A DNA stretch of 64,000 bases from Ophelia neglecta (Eukaryota), in contig OZ260662.1 in NCBI GenBank assembly GCA_965285935.1, forward strand, positions 14,942,001 to 15,006,000, written 5' to 3'. This document shows, in pieces, positions 22,973 through 31,709 of the stretch. The first letter of the stretch is position 1; the number at the start of each line of letters is the position of its first letter. The notes beneath the pieces were generated by a model, which was not told the origin of the DNA, did not search any database, and saw only the letters and a list, made by a program, of their open reading frames with translations. The position numbers and the translations under genes were made by a program.

Positions 22973-22977
22973 CATAC
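22973..22977 (+). repeat. Target-site duplication CATAC (left)
   Basis: Identical CATAC at 31705-31709 immediately after the 3' LTR. Confidence 0.85.
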
Positions 22978-23124
22978 TGTAATGTACCTCCTGTTTTTTT
23001 TTGTGTTTTCTTATAATAATTTGTTTTGTAAACCTTTAATGTCACTATGACACCTAGTTATTTCTCAGATTAGTTTCCCTCCATTTTAAACCGGATATGG
23101 ATAAGCCCTGATGCTGCAGCCCCC

Positions 23125-23156
23125 TATAAGTAGATTAGGCATTAGGCGTCAGATTG
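23125..23156 (+). promoter_or_regulatory. LTR core promoter (TATA-like + Inr-like TCAGATT)
   Basis: CCCCTATAAGTA, then TCAGATT with the A at 23151, 26 nt from the first T of the TATA; copy at +7462. Confidence 0.5.
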
Positions 23157-23176
23157 TAGGACTAGCCATTTTGTTA

Positions 23177-23239
23177 TAGGAACATTGCCCCAACTAAGAC
23201 CCCTTAGGAACATTGCCCCAACTAAGAACCATTAGGAAC
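23177..23239 (+). repeat. 28-bp tandem repeat (2+ units) in LTR
   Basis: TAGGAACATTGCCCCAACTAAGA at 23177 and 23205, partial TAGGAAC at 23233; copy in 3' LTR. Confidence 0.9.
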
Positions 23240-23257
23240 CATAATACCGCCAAAGAT

Positions 23258-23970
23258 GTAAGTAGAAGTTACAAGTTATATATGTGTCAAGATGTAGGGT
23301 TTGTGCTCAAGGTCAGATCTCATATCACTCTATTATATTTTATGTCAAATTTCTTGTATTTAAATCCATGTTGTAGAAGGCCACTGTAATACACTGGTCA
23401 TAGCACGAGCTCATGTATGCATGTAGCTGCCCACTTCTATGTACATGCATTCGCTCAGTTGAGTTATATTTAGAGTAGCCACTGGCCTCCCTGAACCTTA
23501 TGCAGAGTGAGATGCGGGTCAGAAGGTCATAAAGTTTGTCGTGGGTGGTAGACTGCACACCAGTGTGGACAATTCTTAGATTAATCTAATGTAGAACCAA
23601 GCATAGGCCTATATATATAGTTCTGTCAGTAAAGTACCATGTAAATGGATAAAGTTTATGTATGTGTATATGTATTCCATAGCTAAACTTTTAACATGCC
23701 AGACAGGCTTAATTTATTTGTATTGCTTGATCTGTATATCTGTGCAGTATGTAGGCACATATATTATCTAGCTGTCATTCAATATCTTCTGTGTTAAGGC
23801 CATTTTAACTCTCACTACAAACATATGTCTCTGGATAGTTCATAACCCTTCTGTTTTTGCCTATATGGTTTATTATTATGTGTTATTCTGGCTATCTCAC
23901 TATTATAAGGAGTGCCTGTATTTTCTAATGCCTATGGACATGTATAGTATTGGTTTTTCGCTCTTTGCAG
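23258..23970 (+). other. Predicted spliceosomal intron inside the LTR (713 nt; copy 30720-31432)
   Basis: Donor GAT|GTAAGT, branch-like TTCTAAT at ~23923-23929, acceptor TTTTTCGCTCTTTGCAG. Confidence 0.55.
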
Positions 23971-23977
23971 TTGTAAC

Positions 23978-24026
23978 CGTCAATCGTCAATCGTCAATCG
24001 TCAATCGTCCATCGTCCATCGTCAAG
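23978..24026 (+). repeat. 7-bp tandem repeat (CGTCAAT)4(CGTCCAT)2CGTCAAG in LTR
   Basis: Read directly; copy at 31440-31488. Confidence 0.95.
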
Positions 24027-24356
24027 CCTATATCTCACCATTTTCAATTACAAAATTTATAACATTTACCATTCAATTAACACACCATTCAATTGCATCC
24101 AAATTCCATAATGTCTATGTCCTATATATCATAATAAATTTTTATAAAAGTAAGACGCGTATACATTCTTTGGCAAACTTTAACTTCTAAATGTAACACA
24201 CCTAAACAACTCCTCTAACGACAGCACGGGCTGTGCGTTATAGTTACAAATCTACGCATAACACCATCTGTTACAAACACCTACTTGATACACTTACGCC
24301 TTATATACCTTGTAACATTATACTTATTCCACACTTATTCACACCATATGTAAGAG

Positions 24357-27300
24357 ATGAGTGGTGGTGATACCTTGGCTGAAGGGCAGACGACTAAGAT
24401 AGAACGTGGTCGAGCAAGGGCCAGTGTTACCAGAAAGATCACGGCGATTCAAGACCTCATCAAAAAGAACAAAGAAGAAGATGAGCCATTGCAAGATTTA
24501 GAAGAGGAACTTGATGCCATATTTCTCGAATTTGTTGAGGTTTGCACTAAATACGAAGCAAACCTGACAGATCCCGCTGAGTTGGCCGAGGAAGCCAGGT
24601 ATAGTGAAGCTTTAAAAGCCCATGTCACCCAATGTAAAGCTGATGTGAAAAACTGGCGAGAAGCAGAAAGGCAATCTAATTTGAAAGAACCAGAGACGGA
24701 GCAAAATAATACGATGATCCATGATGAGAATGTCCAGCTGTCTGAAGCAACCCTAGAGGCTGCAGAGAAAAACAGACGTGACCAGGAAGAGGTACTTAGA
24801 CGTATCGAGAAGCAGGAAGAAGAGGACTACAAGGCACATCAGCTACGTCAACTTGCTATAGCGAAGCAAGCAGATCTTGAAGCTCGTCAACTTGAGTACC
24901 AAATTGAGGAGTTAGAGCAGAGGCGAAAGCGAGCGCAGGAGATAAGGGACAAAGAGTCATACCTACAGCAGCTACGGGAAGAAACCGAGATGCTGGATCG
25001 CACCCCAAACCGTAACCCCCCTCTGACATCCCGGATCAATGCCTCCACGCCTGACAATAACCCCGCCATGGGCAATGCAACGTTCCGCTCCAGTCGTCAA
25101 TCTTGGGACCCCACCATGATAACCAACACCTCAGCACCAGTTGATGAAACCTCTCGCCTTGCATCCGTGTTTGCTGATGCCCTGAGCCAGGTCCTAAATC
25201 AGAGTCAGGCAAGTAGCCAGTCGGTAATAGACGCCCTCCAGATACCCCAAGGGTCCCTTATGAAATTTGATGGTGACCCCTTAAAGTTTTGGACCTTTAT
25301 GCGGACGTTCCGTTCCAATGTTGATAGCCGATCAGTAGATGCCTCCACTAAGCACAACTGTTTGATGCGACACCTTACTGGACACGCTCTCTCCATGGTG
25401 GAGTACACCAACAATATGGACCCTGAAAGTGGCTACCCTGAAGCACTTAAAACCCTTGAGGAGAGAAGTGGGGATAAATTCCATATAGGCCAGCTGTGGG
25501 TAAAGAAAATAATTTCCCATGAGAGTGTAAGCACACCAGAAGAAATCAGAGAGTTTGCTGACCTCCTGAGAAACTGCTCAGAGACCCTGACTGCCATGAG
25601 CCGTATATCAATCATGGACAACACTCAAAGTATACAGACCATTTGGCTGAAACTCCCACAATACCTTCGCGATAGATGGGCACGTAAGAGCCTTGAGGTC
25701 CAGAGAACACAAAAACGAGAGACCACACTTAAAGAGATGGCTGAGTTTGTTGCACAAGCAGCTGACGAGATAAACCACCCGGTATATGGGAGAAACGTAA
25801 CAGCGAAACCCAAGGAAGATAAAGGAGGAAAGAACTCTCAAAGTAAGACCGCTCAAACCCGTAACCGTCAGAGACAAGCTGGAAGCTTTTCTGCCCAAAC
25901 TACTCCCCAGCAGGTCTCAAGTGGTACACCCCGATCGGGAAATAACTCTGAGACCAAATGTGCTAAGTGTAATGCCAGTCACCCAATCTGGACATGCGAG
26001 GATTTCAAAGGCCTGCGCATCACAGCACGGAGAGACTTGGTAAGAGAGAAACGCCTGTGTAACTGCTGTCTACGGGCTGGACATGTACAGGCAAGTTGTG
26101 CCAAAAAGCGTACCTGTGGAATAGATGGCTGCACCGAAACTCATAGTCGCTTCCTACACCTGCGTCCAAACCCAGGACCACCTGCATCACGTCAACAAGC
26201 AGCTAATTCTGCATCACAGCAACCGGCTGTCAGTACTCCTGCACAACCAGCAGCACCAAGCGCTGTCTTGCCGCCGACATTAGTAACCCCAAGTGAAACA
26301 AGAACCAGTAGTTTTGTCCGTGGTGTAGGTAGTAAAGTGGCACTGCCTATAGTACCAGCTCGAGTAAGATGTCCCAACAGTAATACCGTCATAGATACCT
26401 ATGCCCTGTTAGACACTGGAACAGACGCTACCTATTGTACTGAGGAACTTTGCGAGAAACTTGGTGCAAAGGGATCAACTCGGAAGTTTGAGCTTACTAC
26501 CATGACCCAGTCAAGAATGTCATTCGAGGCTAAAGTTGTCACCTTGATGATAGGGGACCTAGGAGACAACCAACAATTTACCATACCAGAAGTAACAGTC
26601 CGACCTGGACTAAATATATCATCGGCAAGTATGGCACGCCAAGTTGATCTCGCAGAATGGCCGCACCTAGCCGACCTACAGATACCAGATTTGGATATCA
26701 ACCAAGTCGACTTACTGATTGGCCAAGACTGTCCTGATATACTTCTACCTACCGAAAGACGTACAGGCAGTCCTGGTGAGCCATTTGCAGTACACACTCC
26801 CCTTGGATGGGCTGTCAATGGTCCTGTGGGACCTCCTATACCCCACAAGAATACCCGTGTTTCTAACTTTGTACAGCGCCCACCACTCGAGAGCGACCTT
26901 GCCCGACTTTGGGAACTAGAAGGATCTCAGTCGGAGGAAGTAGGAATGTCTATTGATGACCAAAAGGCTCTAGATATATGGGAAAACAGTAAAACCCTCG
27001 TGGATGGACACTACACCCTTGACATACCGTTTAAAGCAAAAGAGCCTGCGCTGGCAAACAATCTTCCCATGGCAGAAAGAAGACTAGCCCTCCTAGGAAA
27101 GCGCCTAGATCGTGACCCTGTACTTAAGGAGAAGTACACCGCCGAAGTCCAGAAATTAGTGGACAAGGGATATGCTGAACGAGTCGCCGAACCTGAACTT
27201 CAGCGTTCTGACAACAAAGTATGGTACCTTCCACACCACCCGGTATTCAATCCAAAGAAACCCGAGAAAACTCGCCTCGTATTCGATTGCGCCGCTAAGT

Positions 27301-30164
27301 ACCAAGGGTACTCCCTGAATGACAACATACTCCAAGGACCGGACTTAACAAACAGTCTTGTAGGAGTACTGTTAAGGTTCCGAAAGGGCCTTGTAGCTTT
27401 CATGGCCGATGTTGAAGCTATGTTCCATCAAGTCTTGGTAACTCCGAAGGACCGAGATGTACTACGGTATATATGGTTTGAGGATGACAACACCAAGAAT
27501 ACCTACACCACATACCGTATGACTGCTCACTTATTTGGAGGAGTCTGGAGCCCGAGCTGCGCCAACTATGCATTGCAGAGTGTAGCTGAGGAGTTCAAAG
27601 ACCAATATAACTCAGAAGTTCGTGAAGCAATTGTCCGTAGCTTCTACGTTGATGACTGCCTTAAATCCGTCGACGACATACCTTCAGCCATTCAATTGGC
27701 CACCGAGCTTCGAGAAGCACTATCCCGTCGAGGCTTCAACCTGACAAAGTGGATATCAAATTGCAAGGAGCTAATTAACGTAATCCCACCAGAAAATTTG
27801 GGAAAGGCTTCATCGCCCCTTGATGTTTGCCTTGATGCCCTCCCGAGTGAAAGAGCACTTGGTATGCTCTGGCACGTTGCCGAAGATGCATTTGGATTTG
27901 ATGTCCAAATTACACCAAGACCGGACACCAAACGAGGAGTCCTCAGTACCCTTAGCGCCATTTACGATCCCTTGGGATTTGTTAGCCCGTACATACTCCA
28001 AGCACGAAGGGTGTTCCAGATGTTATGCCGACAGAAGCTAGAGTGGGATGCACCCCTCCCAAACAACTGGAAAGAGCCATGGGGCCGGTGGAAGCAGGAC
28101 CTCCCATCTCTACAGGATTTTACTATTCCTAGATGTTTCAAGTCTGAAGACATCAAAATTAAATCCGCTCAACTCCATCACTTCTCAGATGCATCTGAAT
28201 ACGCATTTGGAGCAGTTTCATATTTACGCCTTGTCGGGGAAGACAATGAAGTCGAAGTAAACCTTCTGATGGCCAAGTCCAGACTTGCACCCCTAAAAGG
28301 ATCTACCATCCCAAGATTAGAGCTAGCCGGAGCCCTAGAAGCAGTCCGCCTAGACAAGAAAATCCATAGCGAACTTGATATGCCAGTCTTGGAGGAGTCT
28401 GTGTTCTGGACAGACAGCACCATAGTGTTGTGGTACATAACCACCACTGATAAACGATTCCAAACATTCGTAGCAAACCGAGTCGGAAAGATACTAGAGT
28501 ATACCGGCGCATCTCAGTGGCGACATGTACCTACCGATCATAACCCTGCTGATGACGCCTCAAGAGGAATGACTGCTGAGGAACTCCTACAAGACCGTAG
28601 ATGGGTGAAAGGACCAAAATTCCTATATCGTGACCCAGAGAGTTGGCCTGAATCTCCTAGAGTGTTTGCGGACGATATAGAGTCAAAGGCTGAGTTGAAG
28701 AAATCACTCGCAGTCTACTCTGCAAAAACAGAGATCGATTACACCTCAATCATACTGAATTACTACTCCTCATGGTTCCGATTGAAGAAAGCCGTTGCCT
28801 GGTACCGGAGATGTGGGAAATTGTTCCGTAAACAGAAACCGAGTCCCGGACCACTAACCACTGATGAACTGCAGTCCGCTGAAACTGCCATACTCCTGGT
28901 AGTGCAGAGAGCTCTACCACCGATACAGTCACTCCGTAGATTCAACCCTACAGTACACCCTGATGGTCTAGTCCGTATTGGAGGAAGACTTGAGAAGTCC
29001 TACCTTCCTTTGGATGCAAAGCACCAGGTAATTCTACCAAACAACCACCATGTTGTGAAAATCATAGTTGATGCCGCCCATCGACGGGTATCCCATGCAG
29101 GTGCTGAAAGAGTACTCGCCGAAATCAGGCTGAAGTATTGGATCCTAAATGGACGACCCCTCATACACTCAGTATGCAACAAGTGCATTATCTGCAACAC
29201 CATTCGAGCTAAACCAGCAGTACCAATGATGGCCGACCTACCTGAGTCCCGAGTAACCCCTGGAGAACCACCCTTTACCAGAGTTGGAGTTGACTATTTC
29301 GGCCCATTTTTGGTGAAGAGAGGAAGATCCGATGACAAGCGATATGGTTGCCTGTTTACCTGCTTTGCAACCAGGGCAGTCCATATAGAAGTAGCCCACA
29401 AGCTAGACACTGACAGTTACATCAATGCACTCCAAAGATTCATCGCAAGACGAGGCGAACCAAAAGAGATATGGTCCGACAACGGGACCAACCTTGTTGG
29501 AGCCCGTTCTGAGCTGTTAAAGTCTCTCAAACAGTTCAACAGTGAACAGATACACCAGCACCTCCTGAAAGCCAACATTGACTGGCACTTCAATCCACCG
29601 AACGCCTCTCATATGGGTGGAGTTTGGGAACGCCAAATCCGCACCGTCCGTTCCGTACTGGCAGGTATGGGAAATGAGAAGATCCTAGATGATGAAGGAC
29701 TCCTGACTCTGATGACAGTGGTTGAGGGCATAGTAAACGGCCGCCCCATAACCAAGCTGTCGGAGGATCCCAGCGATGATAGACCCCTGACACCAAACCA
29801 TCTGTTGAGACTGCAACCCTCAGTTGATGCGTCCCCCGGTGTATTTGATTCATCCGATATATACCGAAGAAGATGGCGACAAGTTCAAGGCATGGTTGAT
29901 ACCTTCTGGAAACGTTGGATACGAGAGTATCTACCAACCCTACAGTCACGAACGAAGTGGCAGAAACCCCAGAGAGATATCACCAAGGGCGACCTTGTGT
30001 TGATCAGACAAGACACCCCGCGCAACCAGTGGCCCCTAGGACTCGTGGTTGATGCCTACCCAAGCGATGATGGCCATGTGAGATCCGTAGCAGTAAGGAC
30101 CACAAGTGGAGTGTACGATAGGCCTGTGGCCAAGCTATGTTTGCTGGAAGCTGCATCGCCATGA
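24357..30164 (+). CDS. BEL/Pao gag-pol polyprotein (1935 aa): Gag with three Zn knuckles, aspartic protease, reverse transcriptase, RNase H, integrase
   Basis: Gag KFDGDPLKFWTF; knuckles CAKCNASHPIWTC, CNCCLRAGHVQASC, CGIDGCTETHSRFLH. PR ALLDTGTD. RT YLPHHPV, RLVFD, DVEAMFHQV, FYVDD. RH FSDASE, IPRLEL, FWTDS, NPADDASRG. IN H..H..CNKCIIC, VDYFGP, SDNGTN, GGVWERQI; C-terminal WPLGLV..D..VRSV..RP. No env ORF. Confidence 0.97.
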   Translation: MSGGDTLAEGQTTKIERGRARASVTRKITAIQDLIKKNKEEDEPLQDLEEELDAIFLEFVEVCTKYEANLTDPAELAEEARYSEALKAHVTQCKADVKNWREAERQSNLKEPETEQNNTMIHDENVQLSEATLEAAEKNRRDQEEVLRRIEKQEEEDYKAHQLRQLAIAKQADLEARQLEYQIEELEQRRKRAQEIRDKESYLQQLREETEMLDRTPNRNPPLTSRINASTPDNNPAMGNATFRSSRQSWDPTMITNTSAPVDETSRLASVFADALSQVLNQSQASSQSVIDALQIPQGSLMKFDGDPLKFWTFMRTFRSNVDSRSVDASTKHNCLMRHLTGHALSMVEYTNNMDPESGYPEALKTLEERSGDKFHIGQLWVKKIISHESVSTPEEIREFADLLRNCSETLTAMSRISIMDNTQSIQTIWLKLPQYLRDRWARKSLEVQRTQKRETTLKEMAEFVAQAADEINHPVYGRNVTAKPKEDKGGKNSQSKTAQTRNRQRQAGSFSAQTTPQQVSSGTPRSGNNSETKCAKCNASHPIWTCEDFKGLRITARRDLVREKRLCNCCLRAGHVQASCAKKRTCGIDGCTETHSRFLHLRPNPGPPASRQQAANSASQQPAVSTPAQPAAPSAVLPPTLVTPSETRTSSFVRGVGSKVALPIVPARVRCPNSNTVIDTYALLDTGTDATYCTEELCEKLGAKGSTRKFELTTMTQSRMSFEAKVVTLMIGDLGDNQQFTIPEVTVRPGLNISSASMARQVDLAEWPHLADLQIPDLDINQVDLLIGQDCPDILLPTERRTGSPGEPFAVHTPLGWAVNGPVGPPIPHKNTRVSNFVQRPPLESDLARLWELEGSQSEEVGMSIDDQKALDIWENSKTLVDGHYTLDIPFKAKEPALANNLPMAERRLALLGKRLDRDPVLKEKYTAEVQKLVDKGYAERVAEPELQRSDNKVWYLPHHPVFNPKKPEKTRLVFDCAAKYQGYSLNDNILQGPDLTNSLVGVLLRFRKGLVAFMADVEAMFHQVLVTPKDRDVLRYIWFEDDNTKNTYTTYRMTAHLFGGVWSPSCANYALQSVAEEFKDQYNSEVREAIVRSFYVDDCLKSVDDIPSAIQLATELREALSRRGFNLTKWISNCKELINVIPPENLGKASSPLDVCLDALPSERALGMLWHVAEDAFGFDVQITPRPDTKRGVLSTLSAIYDPLGFVSPYILQARRVFQMLCRQKLEWDAPLPNNWKEPWGRWKQDLPSLQDFTIPRCFKSEDIKIKSAQLHHFSDASEYAFGAVSYLRLVGEDNEVEVNLLMAKSRLAPLKGSTIPRLELAGALEAVRLDKKIHSELDMPVLEESVFWTDSTIVLWYITTTDKRFQTFVANRVGKILEYTGASQWRHVPTDHNPADDASRGMTAEELLQDRRWVKGPKFLYRDPESWPESPRVFADDIESKAELKKSLAVYSAKTEIDYTSIILNYYSSWFRLKKAVAWYRRCGKLFRKQKPSPGPLTTDELQSAETAILLVVQRALPPIQSLRRFNPTVHPDGLVRIGGRLEKSYLPLDAKHQVILPNNHHVVKIIVDAAHRRVSHAGAERVLAEIRLKYWILNGRPLIHSVCNKCIICNTIRAKPAVPMMADLPESRVTPGEPPFTRVGVDYFGPFLVKRGRSDDKRYGCLFTCFATRAVHIEVAHKLDTDSYINALQRFIARRGEPKEIWSDNGTNLVGARSELLKSLKQFNSEQIHQHLLKANIDWHFNPPNASHMGGVWERQIRTVRSVLAGMGNEKILDDEGLLTLMTVVEGIVNGRPITKLSEDPSDDRPLTPNHLLRLQPSVDASPGVFDSSDIYRRRWRQVQGMVDTFWKRWIREYLPTLQSRTKWQKPQRDITKGDLVLIRQDTPRNQWPLGLVVDAYPSDDGHVRSVAVRTTSGVYDRPVAKLCLLEAASP

Positions 30165-30430
30165 GCTACCTGCAGTGACCTCTGATGAACTTAATTTGTA
30201 GAAGGCCCTTGGACAATGAGATTTGGAACCGATTTGTGCTCACTGTATAATAGGTTGAGGAAATGTACGCCGAACGCTGTTTCCGATGCCACTGTGGCTT
30301 TTTTTTTATTAATGTCATACCTCATTTATATATGCATTAGTTGTCATTACTAGGTTTTTTTCTTTTTGCTCTTCTATATTGTATTTTGTCGGTACTTATT
30401 GTATTGGAATGCATACCTATGGTAGTGCAT

Positions 30431-30439
30431 TGGGGCCGG
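30431..30439 (+). promoter_or_regulatory. Polypurine-tract position (TGGGGCCGG) preceded by a hairpin
   Basis: Abuts the 3' LTR start at 30440; stem AATGCA-TACC/GGTA-G-TGCATT at 30408-30431. Confidence 0.7.
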
Positions 30440-31704
30440 TGTAATGTACCTCCTGTTTTTTTTTGTGTTTTCTTATAATAATTTGTTTTGTAAACCTTTA
30501 ATGTCACTATGACACCTAGTTATTTCTCAGATTAGTTTCCCTCCATTTTAAACCGGATATGGATAAGCCCTGATGCTGCAGCCCCCTATAAGTAGATTAG
30601 GCATTAGGCGTCAGATTGTAGGACTAGCCATTTTGTTATAGGAACATTGCCCCAACTAAGACCCCTTAGGAACATTGCCCCAACTAAGAACCATTAGGAA
30701 CCATAATACCGCCAAAGATGTAAGTAGAAGTTACAAGTTATATATGTGTCAAGATGTAGGGTTTGTGCTCAAGGTCAGATCTCATATCACTCTATTATAT
30801 TTTATGTCAAATTTCTTGTATTTAAATCCATGTTGTAGAAGGCCACTGTAATACACTGGTCATAGCACGAGCTCATGTATGCATGTAGCTGCCCACTTCT
30901 ATGTACATGCATTCGCTCAGTTGAGTTATATTTAGAGTAGCCACTGGCCTCCCTGAACCTTATGCAGAGTGAGATGCGGGTCAGAAGGTCATAAAGTTTG
31001 TCGTGGGTGGTAGACTGCACACCAGTGTGGACAATTCTTAGATTAATCTAATGTAGAACCAAGCATAGGCCTATATATATAGTTCTGTCAGTAAAGTACC
31101 ATGTAAATGGATAAAGTTTATGTATGTGTATATGTATTCCATAGCTAAACTTTTAACATGCCAGACAGGCTTAATTTATTTGTATTGCTTGATCTGTATA
31201 TCTGTGCAGTATGTAGGCACATATATTATCTAGCTGTCATTCAATATCTTCTGTGTTAAGGCCATTTTAACTCTCACTACAAACATATGTCTCTGGATAG
31301 TTCATAACCCTTCTGTTTTTGCCTATATGGTTTATTATTATGTGTTATTCTGGCTATCTCACTATTATAAGGAGTGCCTGTATTTTCTAATGCCTATGGA
31401 CATGTATAGTATTGGTTTTTCGCTCTTTGCAGTTGTAACCGTCAATCGTCAATCGTCAATCGTCAATCGTCCATCGTCCATCGTCAAGCCTATATCTCAC
31501 CATTTTCAATTACAAAATTTATAACATTTACCATTCAATTAACACACCATTCAATTGCATCCAAATTCCATAATGTCTATGTCCTATATATCATAATAAA
31601 TTTTTATAAAAGTAAGACGCGTATACATTCTTTGGCAAACTTTAACTTCTAAATGTAACACACCTAAACAACTCCTCTAACGACAGCACGGGCTGTGCGT
31701 TATA
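30440..31704 (+). repeat. 3' LTR
   Basis: No differences from the 5' LTR seen by eye; the two short ORFs inside translate identically. Confidence 0.93.
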
Positions 31705-31709
31705 CATAC
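31705..31709 (+). repeat. Target-site duplication CATAC (right)
   Basis: Matches 22973-22977. Confidence 0.85.

What the first reader, a model, noticed from the sequence alone, without database searches (positions are those of the whole stretch)
23142..24262. BEL/Pao element lacks a tRNA PBS; the PBS position is complementary to its own predicted transcript 5' end (candidate self-priming)
Seen: after the 5' LTR (ends 24242) the sequence is GTTACAAATCTACGCATAAC, with no TGG and so no complement to a tRNA 3' CCA. The reverse complement of 24241-24261 (TTATGCGT-AGATTTGTA--ACTA) aligns with 23142-23164 (TTAGGCGTCAGATT-GTAGGACTA): 19 matches, 1 mismatch, 3 short gaps. That segment lies exactly at the TATA/Inr-predicted start (A23151). 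The first 9 transcript nt, AGAUUGUAG, would pair with 24253-24244 (one bulge, one G-U), ending 1 nt from the LTR edge, where a minus-strand primer 3' end should sit. Established: fission-yeast Tf1 primes with the first 11 nt of its own RNA annealed to the PBS. Inference: this intact element may use a comparable tRNA-independent mechanism, which I do not know to be described for BEL/Pao.
Basis: partly seen in the sequence, partly recalled or inferred. Interest (0 to 1): 0.8.

Follow-up and report, generated by a model that had tools for sequence, protein, structure and literature searches.

The report
Retrotransposon primer assembled by LTR splicing

Summary
The LTR ends at 24242, GTTACAAATCT... 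follows it, and there is no TGG before the ATG. The gapped match to 23142-23164 exists but is no better than chance: 48% of shuffled sequences pair as well somewhere in the LTR.

The real partner of 24243-24253 is split in two: AGAT (23254-23257) and TTGTAAC (23971-23977). Between them lies a GTAAGT...polypyrimidine-CAG intron (23258-23970). Three LTRs of this family elsewhere in the genome lack exactly that stretch, so the intron is spliced and spliced RNA has been reverse transcribed.

Joining the exons gives an 11-nt perfect complement that abuts the LTR. Ten other intron-bearing BEL/Pao families of this genome (47-56% RT identity) have the same design, with 10-19 nt of complementarity that covaries in both halves (0 of 200,000 permutations). 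An intron-less family has 14 nt contiguous, and one element in an unrelated public assembly has 12 nt. More distant BEL/Pao elements have ordinary TGG sites.

Best reading: Tf1-like self-priming with a primer assembled by splicing. I did not find this described in the literature searched. No RNA data exist, so the transcription start, the cleavage and the priming itself are inferred. First-stage readers of this scan noted the same idea on other elements of this genome.

The parts
22973..22977 (+). Target-site duplication CATAC (5' copy); the 3' copy is at 31705-31709
22978..24242 (+). 5' LTR, 1265 bp, TGTAA...GTTATA, identical to the 3' LTR
   Evidence: The ends are confirmed by target duplications of solo LTRs.
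23125..23130 (+). TATAAG box, 26 nt before A23151. It is conserved in the diverged LTRs of this family.
   Evidence: Promoter function not tested.
23142..23164 (+). Its complementarity to the PBS is at chance level. It is probably a degenerate copy of the C-rich CA / short exon / donor module (CAGATT|GTAGGA).
   Evidence: comparison with other families
23177..23239 (+).
23254..23257 (+). Last 4 nt of LTR exon 1 (AGAT): the 5' half of the self-primer, complementary to 24250-24253
23258..23970 (+). 713-nt spliceosomal-type intron inside the LTR: donor GTAAGT at 23258-23263, polypyrimidine tract plus CAG ending at 23970
   Evidence: Three LTRs at C12:43.913 Mb, C12:43.920 Mb and C12:60.204 Mb lack it precisely. 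Read laying reports the joint 23257->23971 with ends GT..AG. It is the best donor score of 71 GT sites in the LTR.
23971..23977 (+). First 7 nt of LTR exon 2 (TTGTAAC): the 3' half of the self-primer, complementary to 24243-24249. The predicted primer 3' end is C23977.
23978..24025 (+). CGTCAAT heptamer array (6.9 copies) that starts exactly after the predicted primer 3' end. Copy number differs between copies of the family.
   Evidence: a 7-nt deletion variant
24133..24138 (+). AATAAA polyadenylation signal, downstream of exon 2 start and 104 nt before the LTR end
   Evidence: function inferred
24243..24253 (+). Primer-binding site GTTACAAATCT, abutting the LTR. It is an 11-nt Watson-Crick complement of the spliced junction AGAT|TTGTAAC.
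   Evidence: It is unchanged in the C12 and C5 copies; the C5 copy differs only at 24254, one base outside it.
24357..30164 (+). Single gag-pol ORF of 1935 aa, BEL/Pao type
30427..30439 (+). Polypurine-type tract GCATTGGGGCCGG before the 3' LTR. The GGGGCCGG motif is shared by the related families.
30440..31704 (+). 3' LTR, carrying a second copy of donor, intron, acceptor and both primer halves (all coordinates +7462)

Best explanation
The element starts minus-strand DNA synthesis with a piece of its own RNA, as fission-yeast Tf1 does, and not with a tRNA. The primer sequence is split in the DNA. Its 5' part is the end of a short LTR exon (AGAT, 23254-57). Its 3' part is the first 7 nt after a splice acceptor 713 nt further on (TTGTAAC, 23971-77).

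Splicing of this LTR intron makes AGAUUUGUAAC, which pairs perfectly with GTTACAAATCT (24243-53) directly after the 5' LTR.

Inferred steps: the RNA is cut after ...AAC, by the element's RNase H by analogy with Tf1. The 3' OH is extended through U5 and the rest of exon 2. The strong-stop DNA then jumps to the 3' LTR copy. Because everything upstream of the cut, intron included, is copied from the unspliced 3' LTR copy, progeny normally keep the intron. If the 3' copy is also spliced, or the jump lands in exon 1, intron-less LTRs such as those on C12 result. Priming in trans by a separate spliced RNA is an equally possible variant.
For: 1. There is no TGG or tRNA-type PBS here. The same holds in 12 related families of this genome.

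2. The intron is real. It has a GTAAGT donor and a polypyrimidine-CAG acceptor. Both LTRs of a transposed copy on C12 (target duplication AATAA) and a third, roughly 85%-identical LTR lack it exactly and unambiguously. Read laying independently reports the joint with GT..AG ends.

3. In 11 intron-bearing families the exon-1 end plus exon-2 start gives 10-19 nt (mode 11 = 4+7) of uninterrupted Watson-Crick complement to the stretch 0-6 nt after the 5' LTR. The unspliced sequence gives only 7-8 nt.

4. Both halves covary with the PBS. Exon-2 cores are TTGTAAC, TTCAAAC, TTTAAAC, TTTAAC, ATTGAAC, ACTGTAC, ACTGAAC and TTTCAC. Exon-1 ends are AGAT, CGTA, AATC, TATT, TGTC, AGTT and others. Cognate mean is 11.7 nt against 3.9 nt for non-cognate pairs, and 0 of 200,000 permutations reach the observed sum.

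5. In 7 of 8 families examined, the GT that maximises complementarity is also a top-scoring splice donor.

6. Family Fl has no intron and 14 nt of contiguous complement. That helix closes both the MFE and the centroid fold (z=-2.1).

7. An element at 41% protein identity in an unrelated public assembly has the same layout with 12 nt. Elements at 29-31% identity have ordinary TGG sites.

8. No tRNA or Rfam family matches the PBS.

9. The helices contain no G-U pairs or mismatches. This is expected if the PBS is rewritten from the primer at each replication cycle.
Against: There is no RNA evidence. The transcription start, splicing in vivo, the cut after AAC and the primer itself are all inferred.

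No intron-less LTRs were found for families F1, F2, F4, Ff or Fk.

For this family, the 401-nt fold of the natural intron-less LTR does not choose the junction-PBS helix. It prefers CCAAAGA/UCUUUGG with 24156-24176, and the whole fold is no better than shuffles.

Eleven A/U-rich base pairs make a weak duplex.

If the start is at the conserved C-rich CA just before the donor, exon 1 would be only 4-7 nt, which is unusually short for splicing. If the start is at 23151, the primer would carry a 100-nt 5' tail, unlike Tf1.

LTR ends of Fc, Fi, Fg, Fk and Fm were placed by motif only, not by the 3' LTR.
Confidence: 0.72

Rival explanations
1. The junction-PBS helix is real and selected, but it is a structural or regulatory RNA element. 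It could mark or silence spliced RNA, control use of the LTR acceptor, cyclise the leader or help packaging. The true primer would be something not yet identified.
For: Covariation shows pairing, not priming. The exon-2 half begins exactly at the acceptor, so pairing could mask or report splicing. An alternative helix competes with it in this family.
Against: The helix always ends 0-6 nt from the LTR edge, exactly where a minus-strand primer 3' end must sit. No other candidate PBS exists in leaders as short as 21-35 nt. The roughly 140 helix positions have no G-U pair, which fits templated copying better than selection on RNA structure alone.
Confidence: 0.15
2. One reading: the unspliced 5' end of the transcript (AGAUUGUAG from A23151) anneals to 24244-24253 and primes.
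For: TATAAG and TCAGAT are correctly placed. In a 46-nt window the duplex is better than 94% of shuffles. The MFE fold of the intron-less LTR pairs CAGAU/UGUAG with the region just after the PBS.
Against: The pairing needs a bulge, a G-U pair at the primer 3' end and a mismatch, and the longest exact word is 5 nt. Across the whole LTR it is at chance level. No comparable unspliced pairing is conserved in other families, whereas the spliced junction is perfect in all of them. A self-primer should stay perfectly matched, because the PBS is recopied from it.
Confidence: 0.04
3. A host RNA is the primer: a tRNA half, an internal tRNA fragment as in copia, or another small RNA.
For: Half-tRNA priming exists in Ty1/copia elements (PMC6317226). 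The PBS reverse complements resemble anticodon-loop-like U-rich...AAC strings.
Against: The genome has no tRNA gene within 2 mismatches of the 18-mer, no tRNA in the window and no Rfam match. The PBS differs between families and tracks each family's own LTR sequence, which a shared host RNA cannot explain. The full host tRNA set was not scanned.
Confidence: 0.03

Closest known systems
Tf1/Tf2 of Schizosaccharomyces pombe (Ty3/gypsy; self-primed reverse transcription; Levin 1995, Lin & Levin 1997, as cited in PMC5341516)
   Same: No tRNA PBS. About 11 nt of the element's own RNA anneals to a site just after the 5' LTR. By analogy, the RNA is cut by the element's enzyme to give the primer, and the removed 5' part is restored from the 3' LTR copy.
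   Different: In Tf1 the primer is the contiguous first 11 nt of the transcript. Here the 11 nt are interrupted in the DNA by a 113-932-nt intron and exist only after splicing. The superfamily is also different (BEL/Pao, not Ty3/gypsy).
Predicted self-priming lineages: Tf1/sushi and Tcn1 chromoviruses, TAR (Houba, Osr-1) Ty1/copia (PMC6317226; list in PMC6934838)
   Same: Recognised by the same signature: an LTR-internal stretch complementary to at least 10 nt starting 0-5 nt after the 5' LTR.
   Different: By that criterion the unspliced LTR here fails (7 nt). It passes only after the intron is removed. None of those lineages is BEL/Pao, and I found no report of an intron splitting the primer.
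Canonical BEL/Pao (Belpaoviridae) priming
   Same: Same gag-pol architecture (DUF1759, RVT_1, Peptidase_A17, integrase, DUF5641), LTRs and 5-bp target duplication.
   Different: The ICTV profile states an 18-nt PBS complementary to the 3' end of tRNA-Arg or tRNA-Gly and tRNA-primed replication (PMC8742986). Achilles uses tRNA-Tyr (PMC4580426). Two distant relatives fetched here have TGG sites. This clade has none.
Regulation of Tf2 by choice of transcription start (PMC5341516)
   Same: Whether the RNA carries the self-primer decides whether it can be reverse transcribed.
   Different: There the switch is the start site. Here it would be splicing of an LTR intron.

Membership tests
BEL/Pao (Belpaoviridae) | Pol of Pao type with gag DUF1759 and C-terminal DUF5641 | tested here: met
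   Pfam: Peptidase_A17 7e-48, DUF5641 1e-32, DUF1759, Integrase_H2C2, RVT_1, rve
BEL/Pao (Belpaoviridae) | LTRs with short target-site duplication | tested here: met
   1265-bp identical LTRs and a 5-bp duplication
BEL/Pao (Belpaoviridae) | PBS complementary to the 3' end of a host tRNA (ICTV description) | tested here: not met
   No TGG in the leader. No tRNA near-match in the genome. The same holds in 12 related families.
Self-priming LTR retrotransposons (mechanism of Tf1) | Own-RNA stretch complementary to at least 10 nt starting 0-5 nt after the 5' LTR | tested here: met
   11 nt at offset 0, but only in the spliced form. It is contiguous in the natural intron-less LTR copy L002. The unspliced form has 7 nt.
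Self-priming LTR retrotransposons (mechanism of Tf1) | The complementarity is conserved through covariation in relatives | tested here: met
   12 families plus one external element; permutation 0/200,000
Self-priming LTR retrotransposons (mechanism of Tf1) | The primer is the extreme 5' end of the transcript | not testable with these tools
   No RNA runs. A conserved C-rich CA lies 4-7 nt before the donor and TATA-like boxes lie 25-34 nt upstream of it in 6 of 11 families. This is suggestive only.
Self-priming LTR retrotransposons (mechanism of Tf1) | RNase H cut releases the primer; primer found on strong-stop DNA | not testable with these tools
   Needs biochemistry
Tf1/sushi lineage (phylogenetic membership) | Ty3/gypsy chromovirus pol | tested here: not met
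   The pol is of Pao type
Half-tRNA primed elements (copia type) | PBS complementary to an internal part of a host tRNA | tested here: inconclusive
   No tRNA at genome hits within 2 mismatches and no Rfam tRNA match. The full host tRNA set was not scanned. Covariation with the LTR argues against it.

The most novel reading that the evidence does not exclude
Splicing of an intron inside the LTR is an obligatory step of replication in this BEL/Pao clade. It assembles the reverse-transcription primer from two exon ends, and the intron is restored each cycle from the unspliced 3' LTR copy. Retrotransposition would then be coupled to the host spliceosome, and the LTR would carry a self-perpetuating intron.
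Probability: 0.5. Interest if true: 0.92.

Novelty: new variant of a known kind. Interest (0 to 1): 0.82.

Why it matters
Self-priming has been shown only for Tf1/Tf2. It has been predicted for a few Ty3/gypsy and Ty1/copia lineages, while BEL/Pao elements are described as tRNA-primed. Here a whole, currently active-looking clade of BEL/Pao elements shows the self-priming signature: identical LTRs, open frames, and an empty-site allele in the reads.

There is also a twist not found in the literature searched. The primer exists only after an intron inside the LTR is removed. If this holds, it has several consequences:
- Self-priming would be known in all three LTR-retrotransposon superfamilies.
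- It would explain why standard PBS finders fail on these elements.
- It would be a clear case of an LTR intron maintained through reverse transcription.
- It would suggest a new control point, splicing, for retrotransposition.
- It gives an annotation rule that can be tested on other animal genomes: C-rich CA, 4-7 nt, GTRAGT ... Y-tract, CAG, 6-7 nt ending AAC, then usually CGT (directly after it in 8 of 13 elements).

Tried and rejected
- **RNA evidence.** The look-up of sequencing runs returned only 3 runs of one sample. They behave as DNA: flanks and the empty site are covered. The start site and splicing could therefore not be observed.
- **tRNA or half-tRNA primer.** The 18-mer was searched with up to 3 mismatches. 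ARAGORN found no tRNA at the 20 loci checked with 1-2 mismatches or in the window, and Rfam found nothing. Rejected.
- **The T-rich CAG as an initiator or transcription start.** I held this reading. I dropped it when the C12 LTRs showed exact GT..AG removal.
- **TATAAG as a conserved promoter for exon 1.** It is inconsistent across families; in F1 it lies inside the intron.
- **Closer relatives for within-family covariation.** Only 3 copies carry the LTR-PBS junction. An older copy on C5:34.25 Mb is rearranged. The protein database gave nothing closer than 41%.
- **Intron-less LTRs in other families.** Junction patterns for F1, F2, F4, Ff and Fk gave none. The one Fk hit is an unrelated satellite.
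- **Family Fe.** The fetched piece showed no recognisable LTR end, so it was left out of all counts.
- **L094.** The flank is too short to judge.
- **Joined exon sequences.** None was sent to a database search. Joined models were used only in scripts (junction windows and a fold) and as 23-24-nt junction patterns within this genome. For the fold tool, the natural intron-less copy was used by reference.

Full report
**1. What is at the coordinates**

The window holds a complete LTR retrotransposon.
- The LTRs are 22978-24242 and 30440-31704. They are 1265 bp long and identical at every base.
- The element is flanked by the 5-bp duplication CATAC.
- The LTR ends (TGTAA...GTTATA) are fixed independently by the 5-bp duplications of three solo LTRs elsewhere in the genome.
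- One 1935-aa ORF (24357-30164) carries DUF1759, RVT_1, Peptidase_A17, integrase and DUF5641, so this is a BEL/Pao element.
- After the LTR comes GTTACAAATCTACGCATAAC, and there is no TGG anywhere in the 114-nt leader.

**2.

It is not.
- The duplex with 23146-23160 has -12.3 kcal/mol. It is second to another site at LTR position 296 (-13.3).
- Shuffled PBS sequences reach -12.3 somewhere in the LTR in 48% of trials, and random internal 20-mers in 86%. Even limited to 46 nt around the proposed start the fraction is 0.06.
- Gapped local alignment gives p=0.10.
- The longest exact shared word is 5 nt.
- A self-primer should stay perfectly matched to its PBS, because the PBS is recopied from the primer. 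A bulge, a terminal G-U pair and a mismatch therefore argue against this site. This last point is an inference from retroviral PBS behaviour.

**3. Related families**

The genome (762 Mb) is rich in intact BEL/Pao elements. I fetched the 5' LTR/leader of twelve further families with 47-56% identity in the RT region.
- LTR ends were fixed by both LTRs and target duplications for F1-F4.
- For Ff and Fl they were fixed by genome hits that stop at the predicted base.
- For Fc, Fi, Fg, Fk and Fm they were placed by the ...ACA motif only.
- None of the families has TGG after the LTR. The missing tRNA site is a property of the clade, not of this copy.

**4. The real partner**

An unbiased scan for complements of the post-LTR stretch turned up a conserved motif in every family, 47-272 nt before the LTR end. 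The motif is a T-rich tract, then CAG, then a 6-7-nt core ending in AAC (AC in families Ff and Fm), then in most families CGT.
- The core is the exact reverse complement of the first 7 nt of the PBS.
- It differs between families: TTGTAAC, TTCAAAC, TTTAAAC, TTTAAC, ATTGAAC, ACTGTAC, ACTGAAC.
- Cognate pairs have at least 7 bp in 9 of 9 families, against a mean of 3.1 bp for non-cognate pairs. Only 1 of 100,000 permutations matches this.
- In this element the motif is CAG|TTGTAACCGT at 23968-23980.

**5. The T-rich CAG is a splice acceptor**

Both LTRs of a transposed sister copy (C12:43.913-43.920 Mb, target duplication AATAA) lack exactly 23258-23970. So does a third, roughly 85%-identical LTR (C12:60.204 Mb).
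- They read ...CCGCCAAAGAT|TTGTAACCGTCAA....
- The deleted stretch begins GTAAGT and ends with a polypyrimidine tract plus CAG.
- The breakpoints are unambiguous because there is no shared base at the edges.
- Read laying independently lists the joint 23257->23971, 'skips 713, GT..AG', in a DNA run.

This is the signature of a spliced RNA that was reverse transcribed. The LTR therefore contains a functional intron.

**6. Splicing completes the complement**

Exon-1 end plus exon-2 start gives AGAT|TTGTAAC. This is an 11-nt perfect complement of 24243-24253, with no spacer to the LTR.

The same holds in all ten other intron-bearing families:

| Family | Junction (complementary part) | Length |
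|---|---|---|
| F1 | CGTA\|TTCAAAC | 11 |
| F2 | CGTA\|TTTAAAC | 11 |
| F3 | AAAGAAG\|TTTAAC | 13 |
| F4 | AATC\|ATTGAAC | 11 |
| Fc | TATT\|ATTGAAC | 11 |
| Ff | ATC\|ACTGTAC | 10 |
| Fi | AGTT\|ACTGAAC | 11 |
| Fg | TGTC\|ATTGAAC | 11 |
| Fk | (12 nt of exon 1)\|ATTGAAC | 19 |
| Fm | AGAG\|TTTCAC | 10 |

- Introns are 113-932 nt long. Donors are GTRAGT (GTATGT in Fm, GTAAAG in F3).
- Unspliced sequences give only 7-8 nt.
- The cognate mean is 11.7 nt against 3.9 nt for non-cognate pairs. None of 200,000 permutations reaches the observed sum.
- Among families that share the exon-2 core ATTGAAC, the exon-1 ends still covary with the distal PBS: AATC/GATT, TATT/AATA, TGTC/GACA.
- In 7 of 8 families examined, the GT that maximises complementarity is also one of the few best donor matches in the LTR. 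In this element it is the single best of 71.
- Family Fl has no intron and 14 contiguous nt. That helix closes the MFE and centroid folds, with a U5 hairpin next to it (z=-2.1).
- Models with 6 nt of exon 1 joined to exon 2 close the junction-PBS helix in the MFE in 8 of 9 families (in script only).

**7. Outside this genome**

The closest database protein (41% identity, ENA assembly ERZ17098432) lies on a contig with the same layout:
- donor CACAGAAT|GTGAGT;
- acceptor TTGTATTGCAG|ATATTACCGT;
- an AATAAA signal;
- LTR end ...CGCTACA followed by GTAATATATTCT, which is 12 nt complementary to the junction.

Two more distant elements (31% and 29% identity) have ordinary TGG sites directly after short LTRs. 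The trait therefore marks a sub-lineage of BEL/Pao.

**8. Mechanism**

Shown:
- absence of a tRNA-type site;
- a real intron in the LTR;
- a covarying, perfectly Watson-Crick complement between the spliced junction and the position where a minus-strand primer must end.

Inferred by analogy with Tf1/Tf2 (PMC5341516 and the papers it cites):
- The duplex forms and the RNA is cut after ...AAC.
- The 3' OH is extended.
- After the cut, the template 5' end is at 23978, so everything upstream, including the intron, is restored from the 3' LTR copy. This explains how most copies keep the intron although the primer needs it removed.
- Intron-less progeny arise when the 3' copy is spliced too.

Three details fit this model:
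- The helices contain no G-U pair.
- Their usual length is a fixed 11 nt.
- The CGTCAAT array, whose copy number varies between copies, begins exactly at 23978. That is where misaligned strand transfer would act.

Trans-priming by a separate spliced RNA is an equally open variant.

**9. What remains open**

The transcription start has two candidates.
This would give a 107-nt exon 1.
- The other is the conserved C-rich CA 4-7 nt before the donor (A23252 here). It has TATA-like boxes 25-34 nt upstream in 6 of 11 families. It would make the primer the extreme 5' end as in Tf1, but it implies a very short first exon.

It is probably a degenerate duplicate, which would account for its partial likeness to the PBS complement.

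In this family the 401-nt fold of the natural intron-less LTR prefers another helix for the junction region and is no better than shuffles.

**10. Literature**

- The ICTV profile describes Belpaoviridae as tRNA-primed (PMC8742986). Achilles uses tRNA-Tyr (PMC4580426).
- Self-priming is described or predicted for Tf1/sushi, Tcn1 and TAR lineages (PMC6317226, PMC6934838).
- Searches combining self-priming with BEL/Pao, or with splicing and introns, found no description of this arrangement. The library searched is incomplete, so this is not proof of novelty.
- First-stage notes of this scan on other elements of the same genome propose the same idea. I saw them only after reaching it. They are not independent evidence.

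**11. Verdict**

The phenomenon behind it is a new variant of self-priming and is of high interest.

Noticed in passing
window 22977/22978 and 31709/31710: Contigs of the DNA runs join the 5' flank directly to the sequence after the 3' target duplication (loose end CTTTTCATGGCTTC...). The sample therefore also carries the empty site, and the insertion is polymorphic or heterozygous and very recent.
   Followed up: partly
window 23978-24025: The CGTCAAT heptamer array starts exactly after the predicted primer 3' end. Its copy number differs between copies of the family (roughly 2 to 7 units) and within the reads.
   Followed up: partly
window 23978-23980 and the same place in other families: CGT (or ACGT/CACGT) follows the primer core in most families (CGT directly in 8 of 13). 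Its role is unexplained; it could be a cleavage signal or the start of the transfer repeat.
   Followed up: no
window 24241-24242; family F2: LTRs of this family and of F2 end in TA, not the usual CA. The other families end in ACA followed by a 2-6-nt spacer, while this element has no spacer.
   Followed up: no
L002:1630-2030 (-), equivalent to window 23247-23266 with 24156-24176: In the intron-less LTR the junction region GCCAAAGAUUUGUAACCGUC can also pair with GACGCGUAUACAUUCUUUGGC near the poly(A) site. This may be a competing or switching helix.
   Followed up: no
L048 (G000:C5:34252324-34256157): An older copy of the family (94% in RT, with stops) has the first 225 nt of an LTR joined close to pol. 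It is a rearranged or truncated copy.
   Followed up: partly
G000 genome-wide: More than 1000 candidate BEL/Pao RT matches were found. Many have open frames of 1900-2080 aa, and the four families for which both LTRs were compared are 99.4-100% identical between LTRs. The superfamily looks recently active in this genome.
   Followed up: no
L096 (G000:C1:61649450-61649950): A roughly 30-nt satellite (CCTCCATGTCATTCAACCCTTCATATACAC...) matched one junction pattern by chance. It is unrelated to the element.
   Followed up: yes
L092:3643-3665; L095:~40-60: Distant BEL/Pao elements from other assemblies carry ordinary PBSs: TGGTCCTTCGAGCCGGA (from memory, tRNA-Tyr-like) and TGGTGCCGGAACCCGGG.
   Followed up: partly
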